Origin: Scyliorhinus canicula
Lineage: Eukaryota
NCBI RefSeq assembly: GCF_902713615.1
Contig: NC_052170.1
Coordinates: 4,216,001-4,280,000, forward strand
Reading direction: 5' to 3'
DNA length: 64,000 nucleotides
A program made the position numbers and the translations under genes. Shown here piece after piece: positions 1 through 62,946 of the stretch (the stretch's first letter is position 1; each line of letters begins with the position of its first letter). The notes beneath the pieces are model-generated. The model ran no database searches and was not told where the DNA came from. It saw only the letters and a program-made list of their open reading frames with translations.

Positions 1-191
1 TTAAAAAAGGCAAGCAAAGGATTGTGGCCATAAAGTCCTTTTCACCACCAGCGGCCATCTCACAGCATTTCCCGGCCAATGAAATACTTTTGAAATGCAA
101 CGATTGTGGTGAAGTAGCAAACGCGACAGCCAATTTCGTACACAGCAAGATCCCGGCAGTAATGTAATAATGACCCAGGTGATCTGCTTTT

Positions 192-224
<33 letters not shown>

Positions 225-454
225 TGAATATTGGCCCAGGCTCCCTGGGACAACTCTTCGAAATCTTGGGCCTTGGTTTAATCTCTCTGACAGTGCGCCC
301 CCCCCCCTCACCCCCTCAGCCCGGCAGCTGGGCTGTCAGCTTTGATTCTATCTGCCAGTGTGGGACTTGAACCTAGAGACTGAGAGGCATTGCTGCTGTA
401 CTACTGGGCCACAACTAACCACACGTCTCTTAAGGTTGACGCGCAGGTTCAGTC

Positions 455-6270: not shown

Positions 6271-7904
6271 ATTAAATAGCAGCCGATGTGCTAAATGTCC
6301 CACCAAACTCAGAACAGAAGTGGTGAACTTGCCAACATTCGCCCCACAACTGTCTCTTCCATTCGGAAAAGGGGTTTTAATGCAAATAGGGTCCAAACCA
6401 AAGACCATTTTCACTGGGATCCAGCACATCAAAGCTGAGATCAGGTCACAGACAATCCAAGTGTAGTGCTGAGGGTGTGCTGCACTGCCAGCACAGCAGT
6501 CTTTCAAATGAGATTAATGATAAATAAAAGCAAAATACATTGGCTGTGCTGGAAATCTAAAATAACAGAAAATGTTGGAGACACTCAGGTGTGGCAGCAC
6601 AACAGGGTTAATGTTTCAAAACCATATGACTGTTCAGTCATGTGGGCTTAAAACACAGCTACCCTCAGGGGAATGAAAGATTTCAAAATAATATTTGAAG
6701 GTGTGTGTTGTGCATTTATCCCTCAAATCACCTGATCATTCCCACTGCTGTTTGTGGGATTATTGTCTGCAATGTGGGTGGTGCAGTGGTTAGCACTGTT
6801 GCTTCACCGTTCCTGGGTCCCAGGTACGATTCCCAGCTTGGGTCACTGTCTGTGTGGAGTTTGCACGTTCTCCCCGTGTCTGCGTGGGTTTCCTCCAGGT
6901 GCTCCAGTTTCCTCCCAGTCCAAAGATATGAAGGTTAGGTGGATTGGCCGGGCTAAATTGACCCAGTGTTGGGTGGGGTTACTAGGATAGGGTGGAGGTG
7001 GTCTGGGCTTAAGCAAGGTGCTCGTTCTAAGGGCCAGTGCAGACTCAATGGGCCGAATGGCCTCCTTTGCACTGTAAATATGAACTTTCAAATCAGGATA
7101 GTTTTGAATGTATAAAAGAGGTTTCAAGGTGCTTGTAGGAATGCCCAGAGCAGTGAGCCATGTCCCTAGTGGAGCTCAAATCCCACTTCAGGACTACATT
7201 TAAAAATTTGTCCAAATAGGTGGATTACCAGCTTGTGAATCTTTCCAATGAACCAGTAGCAGACAGCAAGAGGGTGGGAGAGATTCCATGTAATGGAATG
7301 TTGGCACAGTGGTTAGCACTACTGCCTCAGTCCTGGGGACCAGAGTTCAATTCCAGGCTTGGGCGACTATCTGGCTGTGTGGAGTTTGCACATTCTCCCC
7401 TTTCTGCGTGGGTTTCCTATCACACAGTGCAACGGTGTGCATGGATTGGCCATGATCAATGTGCAGGGGAGTGAGGCTAGGTGGGGGTGCTCTTTCAGCA
7501 GGGTCAGTACAGCCCTGATGGGCCAAATGGCCTCCTTCTGCACTGTAGGGATTCTTCTACAATCACTATTCAAACATCAACACACTAATGGAAAAATATG
7601 GCCACAGCAACTAGGGACTTCAAGTGAACACTAAAGGCACTACACAAAAATGCAGTTATAAACCACAGATCCCTTCTCAAAAAGGAAGATTAAAACAGCA
7701 GTCCTTTACTGCAGAGATCACCTCTCTGACCCAGGCTGTTAACGAGAGACCCAAAATAATGAGAATGGTGTAACAGGAAGATCCTGCAACCCAGGGGAGG
7801 GGGAAGTAAGAGATTAAAATCTTCAGAATAGCACTTGCTAATAAACTCTACTGGCACACACACACACACATCACAAACAACCTAGTTAGTTAGACTTATT
7901 TTTC

Positions 7905-20300: not shown

Positions 20301-20338
20301 CCAGGGGAGCAAGCAGTGATATATTCTTCCTGTTATAG

Positions 20339-21840: not shown

Positions 21841-23360
21841 CTGAGGGAGGTCAGCGCTGTCGGAGGGTCGGTGCTGAGGGAGCGCGGCGCTGTCGGAGGG
21901 TCGGTGCTGAGGGAGCGCGGCGCTGTCGGAGGGTCGGTGCTGAGGGAGCGCGGCGCTGTCGGAGGGTCGGTGCTGAGGGAGCGCGGTGCTGTCGGTCCCA
22001 GGGGAGCGCGGTGCTGTCGGAGGGTCGGTCCTGAGGGAGAGCGGTGCTGTCGGAGGGTCGGTCCTGAGGGAGCGCGGTGCTGTCGGTCCCAGGGGAGCGC
22101 GGTGCTGTCGGAGGGTCGGTCCTGAGGGAGCGCGGTGCTGTCGGAGGGTCGGTCCTGAGGGAGCGCGGTGCTGTCGGAGGGTCGGTCCTGAGGGAGCGCG
22201 GTGCCGTCGGAGGGTCGGTCCTGAGGGAGCGCGGTGCTGTCGGAGGGTCGGTCCTGAGGGAGCGCGGTGCTGTCGGAGGGTCGGTGCTGAGGGAGCGCGG
22301 CGCTGTCGGAGGGTCGGTCCTGAGGGAGCGCGGCGCTGTCGGAGGGTCGGTCCTGAGGGAGCGCGGCGCTGTCGGAGGGTCGGTCCTGAGGGGGCGCGGT
22401 GCTGTCAGAGGGTCAGGGGGTAGTCCCGGGGGAGTGTGACGCTGTCGGAGGGTCAGTCCCGGGGGAGTGTGACGCTGTCGGAGGGTCAGTCCTGAGGGAG
22501 GGTGACGCTGTCGGAGGGTCAGTCCCGGGGGAGGGTGACGCTGTCGGAGGGTCAGTCCTGAGGGAGGGTGACGCTGTCGGAGGGTCAGTCCCGGGGGAGT
22601 GTGACGCTGTCGGAGGGTCAGTCCTGAGGGAGGGTGACGCTGTCGGAGGGTCAGTCCCGGGGGAGTGTGACGCTGTCGGAGGGTCAGTCCTGAGGGAGGG
22701 TGACGCTGTCGGAGGGTCAGTCCCGGGGGAGGGTGACGCTGTCGGAGGGTCAGTCCTGAGGGAGCGCGGTGCTGTCGGAGGGTCGGTCCTGAGGGAGCGC
22801 GGCGCTGTCGGAGGGTCGGTCCTGAGGGGGCGCGGCGCTGTCAGAGGGTCAGGGGGTAGTCCCGGGGGAGTGTGACGCTGTCGGAGGGTCAGTCCTGAGG
22901 GAGGGTGACGCTGTCGGAGGGTCAGTCCCGGGGGAGGGTGACGCTGTCGGAGGGTCAGTCCTGAGGGAGCGCGGTGCTGTCGGAGGGTCAGGGGGTAGTC
23001 CCGGGGGAGTGTGACGCTGTCGGAGGGTCAGTCCTGAGGGAGGGTGACGCTGTCGGAGGGTCAGTCCCGGGGGAGGGTGACGCTGTCGGAGGGTCAGTCC
23101 TGAGGGAGGGTGACGCTGTCGGAGGGTCAGTCCCGGGGGAGGGTGACGCTGTCGGAGGGTCAGTCCTGAGAGAGCGCGGTGCTGTCGGAGGGTCGGTCCT
23201 GAGAGAGCGCGGCGCTGTCGGAGGGTCAGGGGGTAGTCCCGGGGGAGTGTGACGCTGTCGGAGGGTCAGTCCTAAGGGAGCGCGGCGCTGTCGGAGGGTC
23301 AGGGGTCAGTCCCGGGGGAGGGTGACGCTGTCAGAGGGTCGGTCCTGAGGGAGAGCGGTA
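21841..23360 (+). repeat. 33-bp minisatellite, CpG-rich variant of the Deu-SINE-derived unit
   Basis: GTCGGTCCTGAGGGAGCGCGGTGCTGTCGGAGG and variants, ~45 units in subtype blocks. Confidence 0.93.
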
Positions 23361-24679
23361 ACAATTTGGGATGTTGAGGCTGTGAAAGGTGTTGAAATGT
23401 GTGATTTCCATTTCTCTGGTATAAGATGTAACGGGGAGTAAGTAATTCACTATTTGGCTCAGACTGGGATAAACGTAAAGATATTCTGTGGCTGCCGGTT
23501 CAAGCTGATATGATGAAGGTTGTTGGGATGAATCATAGAATTTACAGTGCAGAAGGAGGCCATTTGGCCCATCGAGTCTGCACCGGCTCCTGGAAAGAGC
23601 ACCCTACCCAAGGTTAACACCTCCACCCTATCCCCATAACCCAGTAACTCCACCCAACACTAAGGGCAATTTTGGACACTAAGGGCAATTTATCACGGCC
23701 AATCCACCTTTGGACTGGGAGGAAACCGGAGCACCCGGAGGAAACCCACGCAGACACGGGGAGGATGTGCAGACTCCGCACAGACAGTGACCCCCAGGCT
23801 GGGAATTGAACCTGGGACCCTGGAGCTGTGAAGCGATTGTGCTATCCACAATGCTACCGTGCTGCCCCGATGTGGGATGTGATGGCAGAAGCAGAGGATC
23901 TCTTCTGATCTGTGGGAAAGATTGGGCAGCGGGAGGAGTAACACGAAACATCAGACCCAACCCTGGCTAGTTGCTGTAAACCTGCAGTTTCGAAGAAAGT
24001 ATGTAGATAGTTAATTTTTAAAATTAATTTATGGGATGTGGAGGTCGCTGGCTGGGCCAGCATTTATTGCCCATCCCTAATTGCCCTCGAGAAGAGCAAC
24101 GTGACCTTTCTGTGCGGCCTGAACAACCACATGCAGTGGCAGCAGCACTGCGCGTGTGAGGGGTTTGAGCTGGAGTGGGACTCGCACCATGAGCTCAAAA
24201 ATATTTACATTGTCGTCAACTTGCTAATGAAGCAGCTGCTCTTCATTGAAGTGTTTATTGTCATGTGACTGCCTCCATTGATCTGCTATCCTGAGGTCAA
24301 TGTGTGAACATTAACTCCGCGCATTATTAGAAAAGACCTTTCTGTTTATCCAGCCTGTACCACACACTATGATGCAGCACAATAAATACATACCCCCATC
24401 TCACCCCAAACCATGGATTCTCCCGGGAGAGCTGCAAATACAGATTAAAATAAATACTGGATACTTTTTCCACCTCCTGAGGTGATCAAATCTGGACCGC
24501 ACTGATCCCGATTCACCTCGCGCAATGACTCAAACCCATCAAGGATTAGGTCCGGCTCACGCTCAAAGGAACTCACTGAATCAACGTCAGAGAATCAACG
24601 CCTGTTCCCCAGGGTTCACTGTTCTCCGGGGATGGAGATACCTGCCCCTTTCTGACCCAATCTGATTTCCCTTTTCCAG

Positions 24680-25667: not shown

Positions 25668-26314
25668 TCGCTAAGCCGGGACTCTTAACTGTGTACGACA
25701 CGGGTTGCCAAGGGAGATCAGCAACTGGAACATCTGTCGTGGGAGAGGGCAGGAGCAAGTTACTCAGAGTTACACTTGGATCAGGGCAGAGTCCCATCAA
25801 TGGCGACTTGTCTTTTTTGGTTACTTTTTGACTGGGTGCTGTATCCAATGTGACAACCTTGCTGCACAAAACGGGGGGGGGGGGGGATTGTAAAATACCA
25901 CATCATTCTTTTTGAAATATGTTAACTTGTACATTTCACGATGTCAGTAGTGGACACAGTAGTACCTTTAGAATCGGACAAAATTTAGTGTCCAACCTTT
26001 TTAATAAATAATGCAAATTAATCTGCAAGAGTCTCCTCTTACTGACAGCCATTGGATCCCTCTCTGCTCAGCGTTGGGGGTGATGTGGAATTGCCTGGGC
26101 AATGGGCAGGTCTTAGGGAGATTAGATTCTCAATAATTCTCTCGCTCCCTCTTCTTGAGCAACTCCTGCTAAAAGCATCCCACAATCTGACTCCTCTTTG
26201 AAGGGGTTTTACTTGAACTGTTTGACCTTGCAAGGAAGGCACTGCAATTCTCTTCTGAATCAGAAAGCTGCGCATTCGAGTGACTGGAACGCACAAATCA
26301 AGCTGACACTCTCA

Positions 26315-26950
26315 GGGCAGTACTGAGGGAGTGCCGCACTGTCAGAGGGTCAGTACTGAGGGAGCGCCGCACTGTCAGAGGGTCAGTACTGAGGGAGCGC
26401 AGCACTGTCAGAGGGTCAGTACTGAGGGAGCGCCGCACCGTCAGAGGGTCAGTACTGAGGGAGCGCAGCACTGTCAGAAGGTCAGTACTGAGGGAGTGCC
26501 GCACTGTCAGAGGGTCAGTACTGAGGGAGTGCCGCACTGTCAGAGGGTCAGTACTGAGGGAGTGCTGCACTGTCAGAGGGTCAGTACTGAGGGAGTGCTG
26601 CACTGTCAGAGTGTCAGTACTGAGGCAGTGCCGGGCAGTCAGAGGGTCAGTACTGAGGGAGTGTTGCACTATCGGAGGGTCAGCACTGAGGGAGCACTGC
26701 ACTGTCAGAGGGTCAGTACTGAGGGAGTGCTGCACTATCGGAGGGTCAGCACTGAGGGAGCGCTGCACTGTCAGAGGGTCAGTACTGAGGGAATGCTGCA
26801 CTGTCAGAGGGTCAGTACTGAGGGAGTGCTGCACTGTCAGAGGGTCAGTACTGAGGGAGTGCTGGGCAGTCAGAGGGTCAGTAATGAGGGAGTGCCGCAC
26901 TGTCAGAGGGTCAGTGCTGAGGGAGCACTGTACTGAAGGAGGGCTGTACT
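26315..26950 (+). repeat. 33-bp minisatellite (GTCAGTACTGAGGGAGTGCTGCACTGTCAGAGG), ~19 units
   Basis: Tandem array downstream of the STX10 stop. Confidence 0.95.
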
Positions 26951-27763
26951 GAGATGCATCATTTGGATGAGATGTAATAAAATACGTATTTAAATTAGCT
27001 CATTGCCCTCCGTTAAAGGACAGAGATTTGCAGTAAGTTGTGTTCCACACTAGTCAACGCTCATCCCATCAACATAGGTTTTTCCTCCCTCAGTCACTGC
27101 ATTAGCTTCCCCTTAACTACCCGTAATATGTGTTATTGTCTCCACATCAGAGTTTTCTGTACTGGAAATATAGTGCGGCTCTTTCCTGTGTGACAGCTCT
27201 ATCAGTTGCAGTCTGATACTGACCGGCTGCCCTTTTGTTTACCTACATGTTAGTGTGCCCAAGATCAGGAACTCAGCTGGGGAGGATGGATTCGATGTCA
27301 AGTCCATGCTCTATTCGTCTGTGGCCTGACCCCAATCATTGCTTCACTCGGTATTAGTCCATCTCTCACTTCACTTTATCAGACTGACCTTTGATAGGTT
27401 TCATCAATCAGAAAGTGTAATGTTTAGTTTCCATCTTCCCTCCCTCCATTTCTCTGCTGTTTACTACAGAGAGTGAATCCTCTGTCTGGTACTATGCAAA
27501 CTTCAGCCGTCAGTTTGGGAGTGAGTTTAATTAACGCCCTGTTAGTAAACCACACAATCAAGATGAACCGCCCACATCGGGCCAACTTTGCCACCATTTA
27601 GAAATGCCAAATAATTTGGTCTGTTTATTTTTTGTACTGTGTATCTTGTTTCAGCCAAGCTTGCATTTCCTTTTTGCCTTCACAATAACATTTTCTGTAT
27701 TTTGATGGTTTGTAGGTTTAAATTATTATAAAAAGGTGTCAAAACTATTTTGAGATTTGAGAG

Positions 27764-38120: not shown

Positions 38121-38562
38121 CTCCCTTTATGCCGGTGGTAATTTCATCTGTGCAAAGCTACACAGTGTGTTGGAAAGTGGCACGGTGGCAGAATGGTTAG
38201 CACTGCTGCCTCACAGTGTCAGGGACCCGGGTACAATTCCGGCCTTGGGTGACTGTGTCTGTGTAGAGTTTGCACGTTCTCCCCGTGTCCGCGTGGGTTT
38301 CCTCCGGGTGCTCCGGTCGAAAGATGTGCAGGTTAGGTGGGATTACAGGGTTAGGGTAGGGATGTGGGCCTGGGTAGGCTGCTCTTTCAGAGTGTCGTTG
38401 CAGACTCGATGGGGCAAATGGCTTCCTTCTGCACTGTAGGGGTTCTATGGGATTTAACAACAGCAACACCACTGCAAAGTTCATTTCTACCAGCACCCCT
38501 CAGTCCAGCTCTGATAGGCTCCCTCAGCAGAGAATTGCAGTTCATAAGCCATGGACAGATGT

Positions 38563-38749
38563 GAAATGAAATGAAATGAAAATCGCTTATTGTCACGAGT
38601 AGGCTTCAATGAAGTTACTGTGAAAAGCCCCTAGTCGCCACATTCCGGCGCCTGTCCGGGGAGGCTGGTACGGGAATCGAACCGTGCTGCTGGCCTGGTT
38701 GGTCTGCTTTATAAGCCAGCGATTTAGCCTTGTGAGCTAAACCAGCCCC
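38563..38749 (-). mobile_element. Second tRNA-derived SINE family ('head B') with tail 2 (also at 43241-43422- and ~50832-51005-)
   Basis: GGGGCTGGTTTAGCTCA...GGTTCGATTCCCGTACCAGCC head, (CATTT)n end, TSD AGATGTG. Confidence 0.82.
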
Positions 38750-39925
38750 AGATGTGGTGGGCTTGCATCCCTTTACAAATAGCCTTAGAAGGAATACCAC
38801 GTGATGTGGCCTGTATTGCAATTTTCTCCCACCACTGCGCCAGTTCCTCATGGGAAGCAGCGTTCTGAGATCAGGCACTTGCATCCCTAGTGCAGAGGGA
38901 GACAGTCCAGAGTTAAACAATCTGTTAGCAACCGGTTATGGGATAGAACCGTAGAATTCCACAGAATTTCTACAGTGCAGGAGATCGTTCGGCCCATCGC
39001 ATCTGCACCGACCCTCTGAAAGATCGCCCTACCTAGGACCACCCCGCTGCCTGACGACCCGTAACCTAACCTGTACATCCCTGCACACCAAGGGACAATT
39101 TAGCACGGCCAATACCCCTAACCTGCACATCTTTGGACTATGGGAGGAAACAGGAGCACCCGGAGGAAACCCACGCAGACACGGGGAGAACGTGCAGACT
39201 CCGCACAGACAGTGACCCAGCGGGGAATCGAACCCGGGACCCTGGAGCTGTGAGGCAGTAGTGCTAACCACTGCGCCATCGGGATACTCAGCTACTGGGA
39301 GGGTGTAAACAATTATAAGAACTGTAACTTGCATTTGTGTAGCATCTTTTATGTAATAAAACATCTCAACACTGTTTATGTAAGCAGATAAAAGCTGACA
39401 GCAAGGCACAGAAGGAGACTTTAGTCTGGCGACCAAAACCTTGATTAAAGAGTTAGTCGCAAGGAGTATTTTGAGTGAGAGGTTTAACGTGGAATTGTAT
39501 AAATTATCTAGGCAGCAAAGGCCCGGCTGACAAGAGGGCAGGGGCAGGGTGGTGAAGGAAGTATAGTATGACCAAGAGGACAGAATTGGGAGAATGCAGG
39601 ATTGATGATGGATTTTGGGGTCGGAGGAGGTTTCAGAGACAGAGAAGGGTGAGACCATGAAGAGATTTCAATGTCGGGGTGATTTTAAAACTTAGCTGCT
39701 GTTGGATGAGGAATAGTTGAACTGAGGGGTAACAAGACATGGATTCAGCGGTAAACAAGCTGATGAAGACGCGGAGATGGGCCATGTTATGGCGGTATAA
39801 GTAGGATTGGCGATGAAGTGGATACGTGGTTGGAATCTCATCTTCGGGGCTTCAAATGCGATTCACAAATTACAAATGGTCTGATTTCACTTCAGACAAG
39901 GGCCAGGGAGACATGGTGCTGTTTA

Positions 39926-40147
<222 letters not shown>

Positions 40148-40499
40148 TCACCTAACTCAAATCCTTCCAAACTCTGTCGGCTGTTTAGAATAGACTTTAG
40201 AATAGAATAAGAGGTCGTTTGGCCCATCGAGTATGCACCGACCCTTCGAAAGAGCACTCCCCCCCCCCCCCCCCCCCCCCGGCAACTCCATAACCTAACC
40301 TGCTCATCATTGGACACTGAGGGCAATTTATCACGGCCAATCCACCTAACCTGCGCATCTTTGGACTGTGGGAGGAAACCGGAGCACCCGGAGGAAACCC
40401 ACGCAGACATGGGTAGAAACTGCAGACTCCGCACAGGCAGTGACCCAAGGGCGGAATGGAACCCGGGTCCCTTGTGCTGTGAGGCAACAGCGCTAACCA

Positions 40500-41250
40500 C
40501 TGTGCCGGGCGCTGAGAGGCACCGTACCACCGGGCGGTGAGACATTGTGCCACCGGGCGGTGAGACACTGTGCCACCGGGCGGTGAGGCACCGTGCCACT
40601 GGGCGGTGAGACACTGTGCCACCGGGCGGTGTGAGGCACCGTGCCACCGGGCGGTGAGACACCGTGCCACCGGGCGGTGAGACACTGTGCCACTGGGCGG
40701 TGAGGCACCGTGCCACCGGGCGGTGAGACACCGTGCCACCGGGCGGTGTGAGACACCGTGCCACCGGGCGGTGAGACACCGTGCCACCGGGCGGTGAGAC
40801 ACCGTGCCACCGGGCGGTGAGACACCGTGCCACCGGGCGGTGAGACATTGTGCCACCGGGCGGTGAGATACCGTGCCGCCGGGCGGTGAGACACTGTGCC
40901 ACCAGGCGGTGAGACACTGTGCCACCGGGCGGTGAGACACCGTGCCACTGGGCGGTGAGACACTGTGCCACCGGGCGGTGAGACACCGTGCCACTGGGCG
41001 GTGAGACACTGTGCCACCGGGCGGTGAGACACCGTGCCACTGGGCGGTGAGACACCGTGCCGCCGGGCGGTGAGACACTGTGCCACCGGGCGGTGAGACA
41101 TTGTGCCACCGGGCGGTGAGACACCGTGCCACCGGGCGGTGAGACACCGTGCCACCGGGCGGTGAGACACCGTGCCACCGGGCGGTGAGACACTGTGCCA
41201 CCGGGCGGTGAGACACCGTGCCACCGGGCAGTGAGACATTGTGCCACCGG
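40500..41250 (-). repeat. 23-bp minisatellite (CGGTGGCACAGTGTCTCACCGCC), ~31 units
   Basis: Tandem array fused to the 5' end of a SINE. Confidence 0.95.
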
Positions 41251-41694
41251 GTCGCCCTAAACATTCATCTTTGACACCTTCCCAGTTCTGACAAAGGGTT
41301 GTCAGCCTGAACATAGGAGGCCTTGTAGAACAGCGGGCAGCATCCCTATCGCAGGAGCAGAAGCTCCGAGTTTGAGTCCAACTCCAGGACTTGTTGGCCA
41401 CGGAAAGAGTGTTCACAACGGGCTGATGATCAGCTGGGGCATACTCTTCCCCCCTCCCCCCCCCAACTATTCCCCAAAGGGAAAAAATGGTGTGTGTGAA
41501 GATACACTCAACAAAATACCCATGAACATAGGATTAGGCACATTTTGTGCAGGAGTTGGCCATTTGGCTCTGCGAACCGGCTTTACCATTCAGTAAGAAC
41601 ACAGCTGATTGGGCTGTGGTCCCTGCTCCGCTTTCCGCTTACCGCTGACCTTTGCCCCAAGCTTGTCTGGTTTTTATTTTGCCTGGTTCCTTAC

Positions 41695-42659: not shown

Positions 42660-43952
42660 TTCTGGCCTCACCCACAGGTGGAAACATATTTTGTAATTCA
42701 GCTTATTAAATCTTTTCACAATTTTAAAGGCTCTGGCAGGTATTCCCCCCTCCCCAGTCTTCTCTTTTCACAGAACACAGCCCTGTGCTGATATGTTCTG
42801 CCCTCTCAGGGTATGTCAGGTGGCAGGAGTTTGAAGAAAAGCTGGGGAATTCTGCCCACTGGCCTGGCCAAAAACAAACAAGCTGGTCATTATCTCACTG
42901 CTGTTCGTGGGGGTTTTACTGTCAGCAAAATGGCTGCTGCATTTCTTGCATTCCTTCACCTCAAAAAGTGCGTCATTGGTTGGAAAGTATGGGCTACTTC
43001 GTGCTATGTGGGCGGAACAGCAGCAGAGTGGTTAGCACTGCTCCTCCACAGCTCCAGGGTCCCGGGTTCGATTCCCGGCTTGGGTCACTGTCTGTGCGGA
43101 GTCTGCACATCCTCCCCGTGTCTGCGTGGGTTTCCTCCGGGTGCTCCGGTTTCCTCCCACAGTCCAAAGATGTGCAGATTAGGTGAATTGGCCGTGCTAA
43201 ATTGCCCTTTGTGTCCAAAAAAAAGTTAGGTGGGGTTACTGAAAATGAAATGAAAATCGCTTATTGTCACGAGTAGGCTTCCATGAAGTTACTGTGAAAA
43301 GCCCCTAGTCGCCACATTCCGGCGCCTGTCCGGGAGGCTGGTACGGGAATCGAACCGTGCTGCTGGCCTGCTTGGTCTGCTTTAAAAGCCAGCGATTTAG
43401 CTGAGTGAGCCAAACCAGCCCCATCGGTTACGGGGATAGACTGGAGGTGTGGGTTTAGGTAGAGTCAGTGCCGACTCGATGGCAAATGGCCTCCTTCTGC
43501 GTTGTAAATTCAATGAATCTCTCCAAGTTCTCCCCGTGTCTGCGTGGGTTTCCTCCGGGTGCTCCGGTTTCTTCCCACAAGTCCCGAAAGACGTGCTGTT
43601 ATGCGAATTGGACATTCTGAATTCTCCCTCAGTGTACCCGAACAGGCGCCGGAATGTGGCGACTGGGGGATTTTCACAGTAACTTCATTGCAGTGTTAAT
43701 GTAAGCCTACTTGTGCCAATAATAAAGATTATCATCACATGTGGGTCAAACATTCCCTGTCACGCGTGGACCATACACTGCCCGTCATGTGTGGATCAGA
43801 AACTCCCTGTCACTTGTACAAACATTTCCCAACACATGTGCATCAAACACTTCCTGTCACGTGTGCACGAAACAGCTCCTGTGTGCTCGGCCTGGTGTCA
43901 AACTGGGCAACATGGGCAAATGTTCCTCCTGCATGAAGAGTAGCAGGCTTAC

Positions 43953-44784: not shown

Positions 44785-44985
44785 GGTGTCCGCTCAGCAG
44801 ACTGCAGTATCTGCCAGAATAGAAGAGAAGACAGCAGCATTAGATTTACAAACGTTACATGCAGCATTTTACCTGCAAAAGGCATTTCCTTTCCACTGCT
44901 GGTTGATGGGTTCCACTGGAACCCGGGAGCCAGGCGGCTCGGTCTTCAGGGTCTACTCCAAAACCTAGGCTGACACTCCTAGTGC

Positions 44986-46336
44986 AGTACTGAGGGAGTG
45001 CAGCACTGTCAGAGGGTCAGTACTGAGGGAGTGCAGCACTGTCAGAGGGTCAGTACTGAGGGAGTGCCGCACTGTCAGAGGGTCAGTACTGAGGGGGTGC
45101 AGCACTGTCAGAGGGTCAGTACTGAGGGGGTGCTGTACTGTCAGAGGGTCAGTACTGAGGGAGTGCAGCACTGTCAGAGGGTCAGTACTGAGGGAGTGCA
45201 GCACTGTCAGAGGGTCAGTACTGAGGGGGTGCTGTACTGTCAGAGGGTCAGTACTGAGGGAGTGCTGCACTGTCAGAGGGTCTGTACTGAGGGGGTGCTG
45301 TACTGTCAGAGGGTCAGTACTGAGGGAGTGCTGCACTGTCAGAGGGTCAGTACTGAGGGATGCCGCACTGTCAGAGGGTCAGTACTGAGCGAGTGCCGCA
45401 CTGTCAGAGGGTCAGTACTGAGGGAGTGCTGCACTGTCAGAGGGTCAGTACTGAGGGAGTGCTGCACTGTCAGAGGGTCAGTACTGAGGGAATGCTGCAC
45501 TGTCAGAGGGTCAGTACTGAGGGAGTGCTGTACTGTCAAGAGGGTCAGTACTGAGGGAGTGCTGCACTGTCAGAGGGTCAGTACTGAGGGAGTGCTGCAC
45601 TGTCAGAGGGTCAGTACTGAGGGAATGCTGCACTGTCAGAGGGTCAGTACTGAGGGAGTGCTGTACTGTCAGAGGGTCAGTACTGAGGGAGTGCCGCACT
45701 GTCAGAGGGTCAGTACTGAGGGAGTGCTGCACTGTCAGAGGGTCAGTACTGAGGGAGTGCTGCACTGTCAGAGGGTCAGTACTGAGGGAGTGCCGCACTG
45801 TTAGAGGGTCAGTATTGAGGGAGTGCTGCACTGCCAGAGGGTCAGTACTGAGGGAGTGCCGCACTGTCAGTGGGTCAGTACTGAGGGAATGCTGCACTGT
45901 CAGAGGGTCAGTACTGAGGGAGTGCTGCACTGTCAGAGGGTCAGTACTGAGGGAATGCTGCACTGTCAGAGGGTCAGTACTGAGGGAGTGCTGCACTGTC
46001 AGAGGGTCAGTACTGAGGGAGTGCCGCACTGTTAGAGGGTCAGTACTGAGGGAATGCTGCACTGTCAGAGGGTCAGTACTGAGGGAGTGCCGCACTGTCA
46101 GAGGGTCAGTACTGAGGGAGTGCTGCACTGTCAGAGGGTCAGTACTGAGGTAGTGCCGCACTGTCAGAGGGTCAGTACTGAGGGAATGCCGCACTGTCAG
46201 AGGGTCAGTACTGAGGGAATGCTGCACTGTCAGAGGGTCAGTACTGAGGGAGTGCTGCACTGTCAGAGGGTCAGTACTAAGGGAGTGCCGCATGTTAGAG
46301 GGTCAGTACTGAGGGAGTGCCGTACTGTCAGAGGGG
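44986..46336 (+). repeat. 33-bp minisatellite, ~41 units, NACC1 intron 1
   Basis: Same unit as the array at 26315-26950. Confidence 0.95.
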
Positions 46337-46706
46337 TCATGTCCAATGCAATGTTATCCTGAGGCCCTCAATAAATCCCACTTCAAAACAGATTAGCCAG
46401 TCATTCTAATATTGCCCTTTGCGTACAGAAAATCACAATGGGTTCTTAAATTAGGCCTTATCAACAATTCCCAGGAAAAACTAACAGACCAAATTCTTCA
46501 TTCAGGACATAAGGTCCATGATCTTTTTCGAACAAGCGTTATCCCAGCGTCTTCGCCACGGTTCCGCTCACAAGTCGACACCAGAAACAGGTTAACTAGC
46601 GAGTTAACGGATTGCTATTTGGGGAATCTTGTCCTGTGCAAATTGGACGCCTCACTTTCCTATGTAGCAATAACCACAATTCAAGAAACGTTGCCTCTTT
46701 CTAACC

Positions 46707-47408
46707 CAGGGGTGGGCAAACTACGGCCCGACAAAGGTTTTTATGCGGCCCGCCAATGAGGTGCCCGGAATCATAACCGGCATTTTTGAAAAGCCGCCGG
46801 GGAAAAGCCGCTGAAGTCAATGCGCTTATTCAATAAGCGCATTTACTTCAGCGGCTTTTCCCCGGCGGCTTTTCAAAAATGCCGATTATGATTCCGGGCA
46901 CCTCATTGGCGGGCCGCATAAAAACGCGCGTCGTGGGGTGGATGAGTGGGGCTGTCTCATTGGTCGGTTGAGTTGGGTGTGCGACCAATAGGAGTCCAGG
47001 TTACAAACAATAAGCCTTATTATTGTTTGTAACCTGGACTCCTATTGGTCGCACACCCAACTCAACCGACCAATGAGACAGCCCCACTCATCCACCCCAC
47101 TACGCGCGTTTTTATCGCTGACTGGGCCAGGCTGTGCTTCTGTCAGTGTTAAGGATCAGCACAAGCAACTTGACACCTGATTTCAACAAACTGGTAAATG
47201 GCTGCAGTCAGATGCATCATTCTCATTGACATTGTTCTGTTACTTACTGAGTTACTTTGTTTTTCAAATAAATGTGCTTTTTTTTCTTTAAAGACCTTTT
47301 ATTTTGGCTATTTAAAATATTAATTATTTTACTTAATATACTATGCGGCCCTTTAAAATTGTGAATTTCTGAATGTGGCCCTTGCACGGAAAAGTTTGCC
47401 CACCCCTG
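46707..47408. mobile_element. Non-autonomous hAT (Charlie-like) DNA transposon, 702 bp, with an internal double palindrome
   Basis: 16-bp perfect TIRs CAGGGGTGGGCAAACT/AGTTTGCCCACCCCTG; 8-bp TSD TTCTAACC/TTCTAAAC (7/8). Confidence 0.88.
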
Positions 47409-48589
47409 TTCTAAACCAACACGTGGCTCGTGACTGAGGGGAGAAGAGGACTGGAGCACACGGAGGAAACCCACACAGACAGTGACCGGAATCAAACCCG
47501 GGTCCCTGGCGCTGAGGCAGCAGTGCACCAGAGTGCAAGGGACATTGGTGCGGGACTGGAGTCACATACAGGTCAGACATTCCCTGCAAGACAATAGTGA
47601 ACCAATTGGGTTTTCACAACAACCTGACACCCTCACAGACACTTTCATATTCCAGCTTCTTTTGATTTCATAAATGGAATTCAAAACTACTGTGTTGTGA
47701 TTTGACCTCACGGCCTCGGGGTATTAGTTTACCAGTTCAGGAATATATTTAAAAATCCTTGCGTCTGGATACAGGGGTTATTATGAATCTAATATTTTCA
47801 CCCACCCTCTTGACTAGCAAGGGTGGGGTCAGGTCTGACCAGCAGTGAAAACCATGGACAACAACTTCCCCCCCCCCCGGGGGGGGGGGGGGGGAAGAGG
47901 AGGAGGAGGAGGAGGAGGAGGAAGATATTTCCTTGTGGAAAACAAGTTTTAAACTGCTCTTTTCAGATGTTGACATTGACGGGGCTCTGTCTGTTTCAGC
48001 CTGAATGTGTGACCTCGTGATTGCAACATAAAACTGAGCAACAGTCTCTCCGAGGCAGTCAGCTAGCTTCATAGCTCACAGAAGGTACAAAATCCTGACT
48101 CTCAGACGTGTTTCCACAGAGCAGATGGGAAGTTTGTAACTAGCGTTTGGAACCTGACGTTATTGGTGAGTTCCAAGTTTGGAGCTTATCTTTGGAAAAA
48201 AAAAAGTCATGAAGGAATTGATCTGGGGCAGTTAAAAGCAAACACCGTTAATCACAACGAGGCTCTTTAATTATTCACATTCAATGCAGAGTCTGTCACC
48301 AGCACACAGGAACAGAAATCAGAGCTCAGCAGAGAGCTGGGAATGGAGAAGCAATGGGCCCAATAACTGATCATCTCAAATTGTTCTTGGCACCGACAGC
48401 AGATCTGTCCCCCTCCTTACCCAGCTACACAACATTAACTGCTCTCTGCACAAACTCTATAACTATACTGTGGTACTTTCACTGTTCAAGTGGAAATATT
48501 ATAAAAATTGATCCGGCTGGAGTTTTGCATCAAAACTTGTGAATAATCCCTTGCCCTCTTGATCTCAGTAGATTGAGGGACATCAGTAA

Positions 48590-48941: not shown

Positions 48942-49469
48942 AGGTCCTCAACAACAACTTGCATTTATGCAGAACCTTTGATGTAGTGAAATCAATCCAA
49001 AGGGCTCCTTGTTGAGAATGGATGTGGCGCGAAAGGGCAGGTTGGGAGGTGTGACTAAAGGTTTGGTTAATGAACCTTTCTGAAGTTTCTTTGTGACCAT
49101 GCCTCTCGTCTCGCCTCTCCCTTCACTCATCGACAATCCAACTCTTTCTTCACAAGCTGGGGAGGGGCAGGGTGTTGAGGATTCTCCTTTTCACCTCTCG
49201 GGAACCTACACAAACACCAAAGCCTGGGCTATTTCTCTCTCTCTTTCTTTGATTCACCCATCCTTTCCCTGTTGAGGAATACAAGGCCCAGTGCCTCCCT
49301 AATCAAACAATGTCTGACAGATTGAGCACCCAGAGGAATAGCAGGGTGATCCCAAACACTGTGCAATCAGCAGCTTCATTTAAACCCTCGACCCAACAGG
49401 AACTGACCTCAGAGATGGCAAATTCCTGAATTCAGAACTCGTTCCCATTAAGAAGCTCAGTGGAGGCCA

Positions 49470-50035
49470 AAGGCCCATTTGAATCCTACTCCAGAGACTC
49501 GAGCAATAATGCAGACTGGCACTCCACTGCAGTGCCGAGGGAGTGCTACAGTGTCAGAGGCGCTGTTTCAGATGAGATGTTAAACCCTGCATTCCCCCTC
49601 AGGGTGGTAAAGATCACATGGCCACAATGTGAAGAACAGCAGGGAGTTGTTCTTCCCTGTGCACTGGCCAATATTCATCTCTCAATCAACATGATCAAAA
49701 CCAGATAACCTGGGCATCACCACATCGCTGTTTGTGGTTGGTTTGCTGCGTGCAAATTAGTTGCTGCCTTCCTTACATTACAACAGTGACTCCACTCAAA
49801 CAAAAAGGACTTAATGATCATCCTAGAACTCTCATTCTAACAGCACTGCGGGTGCACCTACACCACGTGGACTGCAACGGTTCAAGAAAGCAGCTCACCC
49901 ACCGCCTTTCAAAGGCAATTAGGGATGGGCAACAGATGCTGAACAGATCCTGTGAACGAATAGAAAATAAAACGGTAAAGGCCTTTGGGATGCCCCACGG
50001 TTGCGAAAGGTGCCACAGAAATGAAAGTCTTTCAT
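49470..50035 (+). mobile_element. Deu-domain SINE (SacSINE1/AmnSINE1-like), unexpanded copy, interrupted by a LINE-tail piece
   Basis: CAGTGCCGAGGGAGTGCTACAGTGTCAGAGG...GATGAGATGTTAAAC...GGCCAATATT...CCTTACATTACAACAGTGACT; related tails at ~10-250, 13495-13710 and 55380-55570. Confidence 0.7.
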
Positions 50036-52859
50036 TTGGTTCAAAAGAGCAGGAGATGGGACCAATCAGCTGAAGGAGGCTTGGCTTTTGAAGAAAGGAG
50101 ATGGGACCAATCAGCTGAAGGAGGCTTGGCTTTTGAAGAAAGAATTGAGGGCTGCTGCAGCAGGGGCTTACTCAGCGCTGGAGTCCGGAAAAAGAGGAAT
50201 TTGAAATAAGACGCTGTGCCCTGCTTCCAGCACACTAAGGGTGAAGGAAGAATGAAAGTGGATAAAGAGAAGGGAGTTTCCTTGTTCAAAAGACTAATGA
50301 CTTTTGCACCATCGATAAACATCAAAAAGTCACAATGCAGAGAGGCGAGTCATGTCCAAGAATGAGACGAGAAATGTTAAACTAACTTCTGGATCAACGT
50401 TGCACCAAAAATGTGTAGTTGCAAAACAATCGCAAATCTGTCTCAGAATTTAATCCTAAGTATTAACCTCTGTTAATACTGAGATGCAGAGCACTGCGAT
50501 TGCAAAAGTTGCATATTTTGTACAAGCTACGCAGGGCAAGATTCCTCAATGCTTCAGCTGGACAAAGCACCAACTCGCCTTGGAACTGAGCTGTACAGAG
50601 CAGGAGGTTCCCAGATGCCAGCTTCCATTGCCAGTCAAGTGCTGTCAGCTAATCCTAGTTAGGGTGGCGCTGGGGAGCTGAGATTTGTGTCAGTCTCTGG
50701 CTCTTCCTCACTATCCAGCCACTCCTGACCAACAGAATACCCACGGGTGGAACTTGGGTACAACGTAAACAGACTTGGCTAAGCTCTCGACGCTCCGAGT
50801 AACCTGACATTCACCGTCATCACACAGAAAGTGAAATGAAAAAAATGAAAATCGCTTATTGTCACGAGTAGGCTTCAATGAAGTTACTGTGAAAAGCCCC
50901 TAGTCGCCACATTCCGGTGCCTGTCCGGGGAGGCTGGTACGGGGAACCATGCTGCTGGCCTGCTTTAAAAGCCAGCGATTTAGCCGAGTGAGCTAAACCA
51001 GCCCCTGGAAGTGGAAAGGGGGAGAGAGAAGGGGTAAATATAAGCTCAAGATTACAGCCATGCTATACTTTAAAAACAATTTTCAGATGACAAGAAAATT
51101 GAACATAGATACATTAAAACAGTATGACTGTTCCACTACACACTCAATCCTGAATGGAAAAAGAAAGCGAAAGCAGCATTGCAAAGAGTATAATTACTAA
51201 ATGCAACACTCACAAGGTGAAATAACTGTCATGTCAATCACAGGCTGTACACTGAAGTTTTCTATTTTTATAAGCTTATTGAGGTGAGTGGGTCGGTCTA
51301 GTGCTGGGGAAGCAGAAGTGGTCTCGAGCGTCAGCTCTAAGCCCTTGCAGGTTGGTTCAGGTCCCTTAGCTACAAGGAGAGCTGGTTGTGCTCTGCCCCA
51401 ACAGCAAGAGGAATCTTCCATGGTATCCAGCCTGTGACCTCTTCAAACCACGCTGCCAATTTAGGAGTCAGCTTCTGGAATCGTCCCTTGCCTCAAATGA
51501 CTGAAAACAAACTTCCCAAACTCATTACAGACTGCATCGTGGACTTTGATCCTGCTGTACCGGGGCTGGGTTTGAACAGGAATTCTCATAGACAAACAGC
51601 CAGGTCTAACCCACTGAAGCATGCAAAGCTATTTTCCCTTCCGATATTAGCAGTTGCAGCATACCCAGCAGTTGGTACCTTCAGGTTAAAAGATGGGCTC
51701 TCATTTTCAAACAAAATCTCATTTCCAAATTCCTGCCGGTGTTAACCCACTGAATTTGGTATTGATCGATCCCATCTGGGCTGACCTGGCAATTAAAACT
51801 TCACTGGGGTGGCCTCAAATCCCCAGAATCACGCTGTGAAACACTGCACACAAATGAACTCTATGCAAGTTGAGATAGAACGTGCAAACGTATTGCAAAC
51901 AATTTGTTAGTGTCTTATTTCAGCCAGGCCAGCCCTCCCTCCCAACCCCCACAGCAACACCTTCCATTTGTGCACCGTTGAAAGTATCCTATCTACCTAG
52001 TATGTCAACTGCTCGGCCCAAGGCAGTAAGGAACTACAGAGAGTCGTGAATACAGCCCATCACGCAAAATCGTCTCCCATCCATTGACTCTGTCTACGCC
52101 TTCTGCCTTGGGAAAGCAGGCAGCATAATCAACGACGCCTCCCACCTTGGTATTCTCTCTTCCGACCTCCTCCATCGGGCAGGGGATACAAGATGTACCA
52201 ATATATTCAAAAACAGCTTCTTCCCTGCTGATACCAGACTCCTGAATGACCTGATCTCTTTACACAACTTCTCTACTGAGTAACACTACACTCTGTATGC
52301 TTCACTTGATGTCTATGTATTTACTTTAAAAAATATATATTTAGAGTACTCAATTTTTGTTTTTCCAATTAAGAGGCAATTTAGTGTGGCCAGTCCGCCT
52401 ACCCTGCACATCTTTTTGGGTTGTGGGGGTGAGACACACGCAGACACGGGGAGAATGTGCAAACTCCAAACAGAACAGTGACCCGGGGCTGGGATCGAAC
52501 CCACGTTCTCGGCACCGTGAGGCAGCAGAGCTGACCACTGCGCCACCCCCGTGCCTATGAAATCACATTGTGTATTTATCGTATGTTCTGCGGAGACTGC
52601 ACGCAGGACAATTATCACTCGGTACCCGTGACAATAAATCCGATTGATTTCTTCCAATTGCTCCACAAGCCGCCTATTGGGGAGGAGGAGAGGGAGGGGT
52701 TCAATAACTGATCCATCAAAAAAAAATAACTGCCGGCCATCACCTTCCTGTCCTGGAAAACAATCTGCTGAGGGGGGAGGAGGATGAGAGTTCTGGAAGA
52801 CTTGCTGCAGGTTTTTATATATATTTTTTTTAATGAGGTGGTATAAAGTTTTGCAGCTT

Positions 52860-53480
52860 CCCCACTCCACCCACCCCTCATAGTCTGCACCCCCCCCCAC
52901 ATAGTCTGTAACCCCCATCCACCCCCCCAGTCTGCACACCCCATAATCAGTCTGCACCCTCCCCAGTCTGCACCCTCACCCACACCCCAGTCTGCACCCC
53001 CTTATCCCCAGTCTGCACCCCCTCATCCCCACCCACCCCCAGTTTGCACCCCCTCATCCCCACCCCAGTCTGCACCCTCATCCCCAGTCTACACTCCCTC
53101 ATCTCCACCCCAATTTGCACCCCTCATCTCCACCCCCCCATTTGCACCCCCTCATCCCCACCCCTGTTTGCACCCCCTCATCCCCAGTCTGCACCCCCTC
53201 ATCCCCACCCCCAGTCTGCACCCCCTCATCCCCACCCCCAGTTTGCACCCCCTCATCTCCCCCCAGTTTGCACCCCCTCGTCCCCATCCCACCCCAGTTT
53301 ACACCCCCTCATCCCCACCCCCCACGCCACTTTACACCCCCCCCCAGTTTGCACCCCTCATCCCCCCCCCCCCCAGTTTGAATTGAACCCCGCATCCCCA
53401 CCCCCACAGTCTGCACCCCCTCATCCCCCAGTTTGCACCTCCTCATCCCCACCCCCAGTCTGCACCCCCACCCCCACACA
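52860..53480 (+). repeat. Degenerate C-rich tandem repeat (CCCAGTYTGCACCCCCTCATCCCCA)
   Basis: About 20 variable-length units next to the CpG island. Confidence 0.88.
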
Positions 53481-59757: not shown

Positions 59758-60110
59758 GTACTGTGTCGGTGACTTTGTATTGTGGCGAGAAATTAAAGAT
59801 CTTCTTTCACCGAGTGTTCCTGAGTCAGGTTAGATCGGTTAATGAACGATAGGGCTCTCATTTCGACAGCTGCTACGGGCCATTCCAAAGCAAGTTACAC
59901 CTAATTAAATACTCTCATTGTTTACATACGGCAAACTTCCAGCAACAGATGACAGTGAAGAATTTTCATGTGGTTAGGCATACATTTTGGCCAGGGCACA
60001 GGGAGTACTTCACTAACTCTTCACGGTATTGCCATCTGACCGTTGACCCCTGCCTGAGAGGTCAAATGGCCTTGGCCTCGCTTTAGCATCTCATTCGAAG
60101 ACTATTCATC

Positions 60111-60857
60111 TGACAGTGCAGCACTCCCTCAGTACTGACCCTCTGACAGTGCAGCACTCCCTCAGTACTGACCCTCTGACAGTGCAGCACTCCCTCAGTA
60201 CTGACCCTCTGGCAGTGCGGCACTCCCTCAGTACTGACCCTCTGACAGTGTAGCACTCCCTCAGTTACTGACCCTCTGACAGTGCGGCACTCCCTCAGTT
60301 ACTGACCCTCTGACAGTGCAGCACTCCCTCAGTACTGACCCTCTGACAGTGCGGCGCTCCCTCAGTTACTGACCCTCTGACAGTGCGGCACTCCCTCAGT
60401 ACTGACCCTCTGACAGTGCGGCACTCCCTCAGTACTGACCCTCTGACAGTGCAGCGCTCCCTCAGTACTGACCCTCTGACAGTGCGGCACTCCCTCAGTA
60501 CTGACCCTCTGACAGTGCGGCTCCCTCAGTACTGACCCTCTGACAGTGAGGCACTCCCTCAGTACTGACCCTCTGACAGTGCGGCACTCCCTCAGTACTG
60601 ACCCTCTGACAGTGCGGCACTCCCTCAGTACTGACCCTCTGACAGTACGGCGCTCCCTCAGTACTGATCCTCTGACAGTGCAGCACTCCCTCCGTACTGA
60701 CCCTCTGACAGTGCAGCTCTCCCTCAGTACTGACCCTCTGACAGTGCAGCACTCCCTCAGTACTGACCCTCTGACAGTGCGGCACTCCCTCAGTACTGAC
60801 CCTCTGACAGTGCGGCACTCCCTCAGTACTGACCCTCTGACAGTGCGGCCCTCCCTC
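60111..60857 (-). repeat. 33-bp minisatellite, ~22 units, TRMT1 intron
   Basis: Reverse complement of the same unit. Confidence 0.95.
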
Positions 60858-61164
60858 ACCAATGTTCTGTACAACTCCAACATGATCTCCCTGCTTTTGT
60901 AATCTATGTCTCGATTGATAAGACAATTGCTCCAAATGCCCCTTTCACCACCCTATTAACCTGTCCTTCTGCCTTCAGAGATCTATGGACAACTTCTTTT
61001 TGGATCCTGGGGCAGTCGATTCTTCTAGCCTGATTGCTAAATTGCATTTTGTCCATTCGCCATTTTGTTAAAGTTAAGCTTACAAATAATACTCGTCTGA
61101 TTCTAGGATGTGTCAGGCTGTAAATATTAACTGGGGAGGGGTGGGTCTGTCTCTGTCTCTGCAG

Positions 61165-62935: not shown

Positions 62936-62946
62936 CCTTCCCGCAG

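What the first reader, a model, noticed from the sequence alone, without database searches (positions are those of the whole stretch)
44966..46690. One 33-bp segment of the Deu-type SINE is expanded into minisatellites at four loci
Seen: the arrays at 21841-23360, 26315-26950, 44986-46336 and 60111-60857 share one 33-bp unit. Their flanks are SINE sequence in register: GCTGACACTC before the 26.3 and 45 kb arrays, GATGAGATG(T/C)TAA or similar after the 26.3 and 60.1 kb arrays, and SINE tail after the 21.8 and 45 kb arrays. Single unexpanded copies exist at ~49530-49585 and ~6465-6515. The unit contains the short palindromes CAGTACTG and AGTGC-T-GCACT. All arrays share the same GAGG-GT-CRGT junction, which is absent from the single copies. 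Inference: either a pre-expanded SINE subfamily was mobilised, or arrays spread by conversion into resident SINEs. About 4 kb of this window comes from one 33-mer.
Basis: partly seen in the sequence, partly recalled or inferred. Interest (0 to 1): 0.7.

Follow-up and report, generated by a model that had tools for sequence, protein, structure and literature searches.

The report
Shark SINE-born minisatellite at four sites
One 33-base piece of an ancient shark jumping element (a SINE) has grown into four long tandem arrays within 40 kb of a gene-rich catshark region. The arrays are much younger and more alike than the decayed SINEs they sit in, which makes this a shark example of the SINE-derived satellites already described in lizards and snakes.

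Summary
Four arrays of one 33-bp unit (21841-23358, 26314-26953, 44985-46335 and, on the minus strand, 60109-60858) total 4,259 bp, 6.7% of the window. The unit is positions 79-109 of a tRNA-headed SINE modelled from this window's own copies, plus a 2-base GT joint.

- **Flanks:** they run into SINE sequence in register on both sides at 26.3 and 45.0 kb and on the 3' side at 60.1 kb. The 21.8 kb array joins a SINE tail out of register.
- **Joint:** GAGGGTCRGT occurs 112 times in the window, 111 of them inside the arrays. Unexpanded copies and the outer borders of the arrays read TG or GG there instead.
- **Host SINEs:** they are old and independent. They are 61-81% identical to the consensus, and the 45.0 and 60.1 kb flanks are 52% identical to each other.
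- **Arrays:** the 26.3, 45.0 and 60.1 kb arrays share one consensus. Units are as alike between arrays as within them, and rare variants are private.

I read this as one origin followed by DNA-level spread into resident SINEs, not recent retrotransposition or separate local births. The spread mechanism is inferred. The 21.8 kb array is a diverged, CpG-rich relative.

The closest known case is SINE-derived satellites of squamates (PMC10702118). This scan noted the same 33-bp family before on other pieces of this genome. Genome-wide and cross-species tests could not be run.

The parts
21841..23358 (+). Array A21: about 45 units of a diverged, GC- and CpG-rich form of the 33-bp unit, with 66-bp higher-order alternation and 40- and 58-bp variant units
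   Evidence: GC is 71.5% and CpG observed/expected is 0.96. It has the same GAGGGTC joint as the other arrays.
23359..23420 (+). SINE tail remnant joined directly to A21, out of register (model positions about 374-402)
   Evidence: local alignment, shuffle P 0.004-0.0075
26283..26317 (+). SINE head remnant 5' of A26, in register (model positions 44-78)
   Evidence: 26283-26349 aligns to model 44-110, E 1.9e-17
26318..26953 (+). Array A26: about 19 units, with degenerate partial units at the 3' edge
26954..27068 (+). SINE body remnant 3' of A26, in register, keeping the SINE's own TGCA-type border
44901..44984 (+). SINE head 5' of A45, in register (model positions 3-78, 81% identity)
   Evidence: E 6.5e-23
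44985..46335 (+). Array A45: 41 units, about 190 bp upstream of a BTB-domain (NACC1-like) coding exon on the minus strand
46336..46687 (+). SINE body 3' of A45 (model positions 110-352, about 65% identity), then cut off by a hAT MITE
   Evidence: E 1.6e-18 and 3.6e-26
60109..60858 (-). Array A60: about 22 units in a TRMT1 intron, antisense to the gene. Its 5' edge abuts unrelated LINE-like DNA at a TGAGG microhomology.
59872..60108 (-). SINE body and tail 3' of A60, in register (model positions 110-391)
   Evidence: 60137-59872 aligns to model 79-391, E 1.7e-58
49454..49803 (+). Unexpanded SINE copy with a single unit at about 49530-49560. Its tail continues at 49975-50036 after an inserted element.
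6402..6514 (+). Unexpanded SINE head plus a single unit
12..420 (-). Full-length unexpanded SINE copy with recognisable A-box-like and B-box-like motifs in its head

Best explanation
These are four members of a dispersed minisatellite family born from a SINE. The unit is the 31 bases just 3' of the SINE's tRNA-type head plus a GT joint.

The family arose once. All internal joints at all four loci carry the same derived GT, whereas a simple slip between the SINE's own 33-bp-spaced short repeats would give TG.

The arrays at 26.3, 45.0 and 60.1 kb were seeded long after their host SINEs had inserted and decayed. Seeding was by DNA-level, homology-guided copying of array units into the matching single segment of resident SINEs. 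Two routes are possible: repair of a break using another array as template, or integration of a circle of repeat units by one crossover. Each array then grew and turned over locally by slippage and unequal exchange, gaining private variants.

The 21.8 kb array is an older or faster-evolving offshoot that drifted to a CpG-rich unit.

**Shown:** the arrays, the flank register, the shared joint, the old independent flanks and the identical array consensus. **Inferred:** the single origin and the transfer mechanism.
For: - **Unit and register:**
- **Joint:** 111 of 112 GAGGGTCRGT matches lie in the arrays. Where a SINE border survives it reads TG, or GG 5' of the 26.3 kb array, never GT: 5' of the 26.3 and 45.0 kb arrays and 3' of the 26.3 and 60.1 kb arrays. 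The 3' border at 45.0 kb is GTC-like. The unexpanded copies read TG before the unit.
- **Old hosts:** flanks are 61-81% identical to the window SINE consensus, like unexpanded copies at 57-84%. The flanks of the 45.0 and 60.1 kb arrays match at 93 of 179 columns, 52%.
- **Young arrays:** the consensus is identical in three arrays except at one CpG C/T site. Mean unit identity is 0.918-0.949 between arrays and 0.898-0.957 within them.
- **Neutral expectation:** at even 20% divergence, the chance that 33 sites stay unchanged is about 0.8^33 = 6e-4 per array (my calculation).
- **Local history:** rare variants are not shared beyond chance, P 0.18-0.86, so each array has its own recent history after a common seed.
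- **Drift is possible:** the 21.8 kb array shows that an isolated array does drift, with 5 fixed differences from the shared unit.
- **One-sided register:** the 60.1 and 21.8 kb arrays have a SINE flank in register on one side at most, and the 60.1 kb array ends 5' in a microhomology junction. This fits break repair with one homologous end.
- **Precedent:** squamate SINE-derived satellites show units 89% alike against 64% for the SINE copies.
Against: - No conversion tract extends visibly into the flanks, and no donor was identified.
- Homology between old SINE copies is low for classical recombination.
- The SINE consensus comes from about ten decayed copies in this window. It includes array-edge units, so flank ages are rough.
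- Constraint on the unit, with only well-expanding units persisting, could also keep arrays alike.
- The 3' border at 45.0 kb looks GTC-like, so that locus could even be a birthplace.
- Nothing was tested genome-wide, between species or between individuals.
Confidence: 0.5

Rival explanations
1. An SVA-like route. A SINE subfamily that already carried two or more units with the GT joint was retrotransposed, and the copies later expanded in this repeat-prone region.
For: - Head, array and body are collinear and in register at 26.3 and 45.0 kb.
- The 60.1 kb locus looks like a 5'-truncated copy with microhomology at its 5' junction.
- The unit contains no T4 run that would stop RNA polymerase III.
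- An earlier scan note reports a SINE-minisatellite-SINE block inserted as one piece elsewhere in this genome (s1-240135, not checked here).
Against: - The flanks are old and mutually divergent (52% identity between the 45.0 and 60.1 kb flanks). They are no younger than ordinary copies, so retrotransposition would be ancient. Cross-locus homogenisation would still be needed to explain the identical array consensus.
- No copy with 2-3 units exists in the window.
- No target-site duplications could be defined.
Confidence: 0.15
2. Independent local expansions. Each resident SINE expanded on its own soon after insertion, because the segment is flanked by short 33-bp-spaced repeats and contains palindromes. 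The units stay alike because only units that expand well persist.
For: - The SINE carries similar short motifs 33 bp apart, just before the unit and just after it.
- The GT joint lengthens the palindrome from 8 to 10 bases.
- The window is repeat-prone in general, with 14.5% minisatellite sequence.
- The squamate study concludes that satellite birth from SINEs is non-random.
Against: - All four arrays share a joint that needs two changes from the simple slip product.
- Arrays do not carry the local mutations expected from decayed hosts.
- Predicted single-strand folding of the unit is not unusual, z -0.5 to -1.7.
- The 21.8 kb array shows the unit is free to drift.
Confidence: 0.2
3. An assembly artefact. 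Reads from one or a few real arrays were placed at several SINE loci.
For: Near-identical units at several loci are hard to assemble. I could not inspect reads.
Against: Each array has its own length, private variants, higher-order pattern and distinct, continuous flanks on both sides.
Confidence: 0.03
4. The arrays are kept for a function, for example as arrays of protein-binding sites or, at 21.8 kb, as a CpG island.
For: - The 21.8 kb array has CpG observed/expected of 0.96 over 1.5 kb.
- The arrays lie in or next to genes: an STX-like exon, a BTB exon and a TRMT1 intron.
Against: - There is no evidence of binding, expression or conservation.
- No Rfam family matches.
- Long open frames in the arrays are a by-product of a 33-base period without stops in some frames.
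- Copy number and position differ freely between loci.
Confidence: 0.05

Closest known systems
SINE-derived satellites (sSats) of squamate reptiles (Vassetzky, Kosushkin and Ryskov 2023, PMC10702118)
   Same: - The tandem units are an internal portion of a tRNA-related SINE.
- A terminal unit runs on into SINE sequence at one or both ends.
- There are many loci.
- Units are more alike within and between loci than the SINE copies are (89% against 64% in cobra).
- Locus-specific sub-variants alternate.
   Different: - The host lineage is a cartilaginous fish and the SINE family is different.
- The unit is short, at 33 bp against 67 bp in snakes.
- The arrays lie in introns and gene flanks of a gene-dense region. 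Whether that region is subtelomeric is unknown.
- A shared non-templated 2-base joint points to a single origin.
- The paper itself says it is uncertain whether such satellites occur outside squamates.
SVA elements of hominoids, composite retrotransposons with an internal VNTR (own knowledge)
   Same: SINE-related sequence flanks a variable minisatellite whose unit derives from the element.
   Different: SVA copies are mobilised as whole units, with young flanks, target-site duplications and poly(A). Here the flanks are old and unrelated in age to the arrays, and no target-site duplications were found.
Euchromatic spread of satellites and transposon-derived tandem repeats, for example Drosophila 1.688 blocks and MITE-derived satellites, with proposed circle-mediated or repair-mediated spread (own knowledge)
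   Same: Short arrays of one unit are dispersed and locally clustered, and spread at the DNA level to new sites.
   Different: Here the landing sites are the homologous segment of resident SINEs, in register. No circles or donors have been shown.

Membership tests
SINE-derived satellite (sSat, PMC10702118) | Head-to-tail tandem repeats whose unit matches an internal part of a SINE | tested here: met
   Period-33 arrays. The unit corresponds to positions 79-109 of the window SINE model.
SINE-derived satellite (sSat, PMC10702118) | A terminal unit extends into the matching SINE region at one or both ends | tested here: met
   Both ends at 26.3 and 45.0 kb, and the 3' end at 60.1 kb. At 21.8 kb only an out-of-register tail is present.
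SINE-derived satellite (sSat, PMC10702118) | Units are more homogeneous within and between loci than the SINE copies are | tested here: met
   Units are 0.90-0.96 identical, against 0.52-0.81 for flanks. This was tested within this window only.
SINE-derived satellite (sSat, PMC10702118) | Many loci genome-wide, with a subtelomeric preference | not testable with these tools
   No access to the rest of the genome. Earlier scan notes report the same family on other pieces, but those are unchecked leads.
Deu-domain SINE (SacSINE1-like) | tRNA-derived head with polymerase III A and B boxes | tested here: inconclusive
   ARAGORN and Rfam find no tRNA in the decayed heads. The copy at 12-420 shows box-like motifs by eye.
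Deu-domain SINE (SacSINE1-like) | Central Deu conserved domain and L2-type 3' tail | not testable with these tools
   No reference consensus is held. PMC5499810 describes SacSINE1 as having a tRNA head, a Deu domain and an L2 tail in sharks. The resemblance rests on my memory.
SVA-like mobile composite with internal VNTR | Copies share young, near-identical flanking element sequence | tested here: not met
   The flanks of the 45.0 and 60.1 kb arrays are 52% identical, and flanks are 61-81% identical to the consensus.
SVA-like mobile composite with internal VNTR | Target-site duplications around the whole composite | tested here: inconclusive
   The element ends are truncated or interrupted by a hAT MITE, other SINEs or a LINE fragment. 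No duplications could be defined.
Hypervariable minisatellite (VNTR) | Unit of 10-100 bp in arrays of 0.5 kb or more | tested here: met
Hypervariable minisatellite (VNTR) | Copy number varies between individuals | not testable with these tools

The most novel reading that the evidence does not exclude
Old, decayed SINE copies act as landing pads for a living minisatellite. Array units copy themselves at the DNA level, by repair synthesis or by circle integration, into the single homologous segment of nearby resident SINEs, which produces local clusters of arrays in gene-rich DNA. That would give a concrete, testable route for how a satellite spreads between loci without transposition.
Probability: 0.35. 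Interest if true: 0.6.

Novelty: new member of a known kind. Interest (0 to 1): 0.4.

Why it matters
How tandem repeats are born and how one unit comes to occupy many loci are old questions in satellite biology. This family offers an unusually clean marker set:
- a known parent sequence
- a diagnostic 2-base joint that marks common descent
- host SINEs whose age can be read independently of the arrays

If the family is genome-wide in catshark, it extends SINE-derived satellites from squamates to cartilaginous fishes. It would also allow a direct test of spread by retrotransposition, by DNA-level transfer or by independent birth.

On the practical side, the arrays fill introns and promoter-proximal DNA of NACC1-like, TRMT1 and STX-like genes. 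They are likely length-polymorphic markers.

Tried and rejected
- **Pattern scans of public collections:** the viral scan found nothing. The metagenome scan gave one contig with a single 26-base match and no array or SINE.
- **Orthologous intron through the TRMT1 exon:** the best protein hits were only 71-75% identical. The one contig I fetched is 69% GC with no SINE, so it is not from a shark.
- **Hairpin predisposition:** single-strand DNA folding of unit dimers and trimers is not unusual, z -0.5 to -1.7.
- **Excess sharing of rare unit variants between arrays:** not found, P 0.18-0.86.
- **tRNA identity of the SINE head:** no hits from ARAGORN or Rfam.
- **SINE head 5' of the 21.8 kb array:** not significant, P 0.07-0.36.
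- **Coding reading:** open frames of up to 268 aa in the 45 kb array are a mechanical result of a 33-base period.
- **Literature:** text searches for the unit sequence found no paper. I found no paper on SINE-derived satellites in sharks, and the catshark genome paper does not discuss satellites or SINEs.
- **Other minisatellites in the window:** none has a detectable parent sequence elsewhere in the window.

Full report
**What is there.** Tandem Repeats Finder reports four period-33 arrays:

| Array | Coordinates | Strand | Copies | Matches |
|---|---|---|---|---|
| A21 | 21841-23358 | + | 45.4 | 84% |
| A26 | 26314-26953 | + | 19.5 | 89% |
| A45 | 44985-46335 | + | 41.0 | 94% |
| A60 | 60109-60858 | - | 22.7 | 94% |

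They sum to 4,259 bp, or 6.7% of the window. A 26-base unit pattern has 74 matches against 0.00 expected from shuffles. Earlier scan notes say the genome is a catshark. The window is rich in minisatellites generally: the 14 array regions I summed make up 14.5% of it, including several arrays unrelated to this one.

**The parent element.** Starting from the unexpanded copy at 49440-49840, I built a profile of the SINE by iterated nhmmer on the window with the array interiors masked. The final model has 427 positions and finds 14 pieces.

- The array unit corresponds to model positions 79-109, directly 3' of the head, plus two extra bases (GT).
- Unexpanded copies that carry one unit lie at 49454-49803, 6402-6514 and 12-420 (minus strand).
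- The last of these shows A-box-like and B-box-like motifs in its head. ARAGORN and Rfam nevertheless find no tRNA in these decayed heads.
- I could not test the name 'Deu-type / SacSINE1', because no reference consensus was available. PMC5499810 describes SacSINE1 as a shark SINE with a tRNA head, a Deu domain and an L2 tail. The resemblance rests on my memory.

**Flanks.**

- **A45** sits in a complete old SINE, in register on both sides. On the 5' side, 44901-45016 aligns to model 3-110 (E 6.5e-23). On the 3' side, 46304-46370 aligns to 79-145 and 46536-46687 aligns to 198-352 (E 3.6e-26). A hAT MITE then cuts the element.
- **A26** is in register on both sides.
- **A60** is in register on its 3' side: 60137-59872 aligns to model 79-391 (E 1.7e-58). 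Its 5' edge abuts an unrelated LINE-like fragment, with a TGAGG overlap at the junction.
- **A21** joins a SINE-tail-like stretch at about model 374-402, skipping the SINE body (shuffle P 0.004-0.0075). Its 5' side has no significant SINE match.

**The joint.** Every internal junction reads GAGG-GT-C(A/G)GT. That motif has 112 matches in the window, 111 of them inside the four arrays.

- The bases just before the unit are TG in the unexpanded copies and 5' of A45, and GG 5' of A26. The first bases after the unit's GAGG are TG 3' of A26 and A60.
- The SINE has similar short motifs 33 bp apart on either side of the segment. A simple slip between them would give a 33-bp duplication with a TG joint.
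- The observed GT needs two further changes. It lengthens the unit's palindrome from 8 to 10 bases.
- Because all four arrays share it, including the divergent A21, I take it as a mark of common descent.

**Age contrast.**

- Flanks of the array-bearing SINEs are 61-81% identical to the window consensus, the same range as unexpanded copies (57-84%).
- The flanks of A45 and A60 match each other at 93 of 179 aligned columns, or 52%.
- A26 and A45 have the same 33-base consensus, and A60 differs only at one C/T site inside a CpG.
- Mean pairwise unit identity is 0.918-0.949 between these arrays and 0.898-0.957 within them.
- Under unbiased turnover an array consensus should change at about the single-copy rate. 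At even 20% divergence the chance that 33 sites stay unchanged is about 6e-4 per array (my calculation).
- So the present units of these three arrays share an ancestor far younger than their host SINEs.
- Rare variants are not shared more than chance predicts (6 shared alleles; P 0.18-0.86 depending on the transition bias assumed). Each array therefore has its own recent local history after a common seed.

Two caveats apply. The SINE consensus comes from about ten decayed copies, and it includes array-edge units. The forced alignment may also understate flank identity.

**A21.**

- Its consensus differs from the shared unit at 5 positions, and its 5'-most unit type differs at 6. All of these changes are from A/T to G/C.
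- The array is 71.5% GC with CpG observed/expected of 0.96. The other arrays are at 0.13-0.30 and the window as a whole at 0.49.
- Read in the opposite direction, most of these differences are CpG decay. I therefore cannot say whether A21 kept ancestral CpGs, for example through low germline methylation, or gained G/C through biased conversion.
- Either way, it shows that an isolated array of this family does drift. That argues against strict constraint as the reason the other three are identical.

**Mechanism.**

- Separate recent births from decayed resident SINEs are rejected. The arrays carry neither the local mutations of their hosts nor TG joints.
- Recent retrotransposition of a pre-expanded SINE is disfavoured, because the flanks are old and mutually divergent. 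Ancient retrotransposition would still need later homogenisation between loci.
- The simplest account has three steps: one origin, then DNA-level copying of units into the homologous segment of resident SINEs, then local growth.
- The copying could be break repair templated by another array, or integration of a circle of units by one crossover.
- The one-sided register and microhomology junction at A60, and the out-of-register join at A21, fit repair events with only one homologous end.
- This mechanism is inferred. I found no donor and no conversion tract reaching into the flanks.
- Predicted hairpin stability of the unit is unremarkable, z -0.5 to -1.7.

**Context.** Translating the neighbouring exons and scanning them against Pfam gives the following.

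- A45 lies about 190 bp upstream of a BTB-domain (NACC1-like) coding exon on the minus strand.
- A60 fills most of a 1.3-kb TRMT1 intron, between exons that match adjacent parts of the TRM profile.
- A21 lies about 120 bp after an exon whose translation I read as a syntaxin-type SNARE segment. That reading rests on my own knowledge, because Pfam gave no hit.
- Open frames of up to 268 aa inside A45 are a by-product of the 33-base period.

**Comparison with what is known.** Vassetzky et al. 2023 (PMC10702118) describe SINE-derived satellites in 56 squamate genomes.

- Units are taken from inside tRNA-related SINEs.
- A terminal unit runs on into SINE sequence at one or both ends.
- Some genomes have thousands of loci.
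- Units are more alike within and between loci than the SINE copies are (89% against 64%).
- Locus-specific sub-variants alternate, and there is a subtelomeric preference.

The authors state that it is uncertain whether such satellites exist outside squamates. The present family meets the features I could test. My searches found no paper describing it in sharks. I therefore class it as a new member of a known kind.

**Earlier scan notes.** This scan has already noted the same 33-bp family on other pieces of this genome (s1-236530, s1-210657, s1-203786, s1-213969). I did not check those notes. One of them gave me the lead to the squamate paper, which I then read myself. They also report clusters of four or five arrays per window. 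If that holds, it favours local DNA-level spread or regional repeat-proneness.

**Limits.** My attempts to reach orthologous loci found only non-shark DNA. Genome-wide distribution, cross-species age and length polymorphism therefore remain untested.

Noticed in passing
window 39001-39019 (-), 38387-38405 (+), 40231-40249 (-), 55092-55110 (-): A different, abundant SINE family carries a motif (consensus near TCAGAGGGTCGGTGCAGAC) that matches the array unit across its GT joint. The local alignments span about 16-46 bases, with shuffle P between less than 0.001 and 0.044. The match to the unexpanded parent SINE is weaker. This could be chance, a shared ancient module, or a templated source of the joint.
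   Followed up: partly
window 21841-23358: The 21.8 kb array has the composition of a CpG island (71.5% GC, CpG observed/expected 0.96, 154 CpGs). It lies about 120 bp after a coding exon. All of its fixed differences from the common unit run from A/T to G/C.
   Followed up: partly
window 18965-20301, 37465-37827, 40505-41251, 52869-53469, 58603-59472, 62471-62938: Six other minisatellites, with units of 21-62 bp, lie in the same 64 kb. Minisatellites make up 14.5% of the window. For these six, and for two shorter arrays at 8702-8930 and 43735-43882, I found no parent sequence elsewhere in the window.
   Followed up: partly
window 60859-61060 (-): A LINE-like fragment, with a translation ending ...DYKSREIMLELYRTLVR, lacks its 3' part and stops exactly where the 60.1 kb array begins. 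The junction has a TGAGG overlap.
   Followed up: partly
L001 207-232 (metagenome contig Ga0099805_1699375): This contig holds a single exact 26-base match to the unit-joint-unit pattern, with no array or SINE around it. Its origin is unknown.
   Followed up: partly
window 38659-38748 (-): ARAGORN calls a 90-base tRNA-Tyr with anticodon ATA. Rfam finds no tRNA at its gathering score anywhere in the window, so this is probably a pseudogene or a false call.
   Followed up: no
window 46700-47410: A hAT-type MITE with roughly 8-bp target duplications (TTCTAACC and TTCTAAAC) cuts off the tail of the SINE that hosts the 45 kb array. Another follow-up of this scan has already covered it.
   Followed up: no
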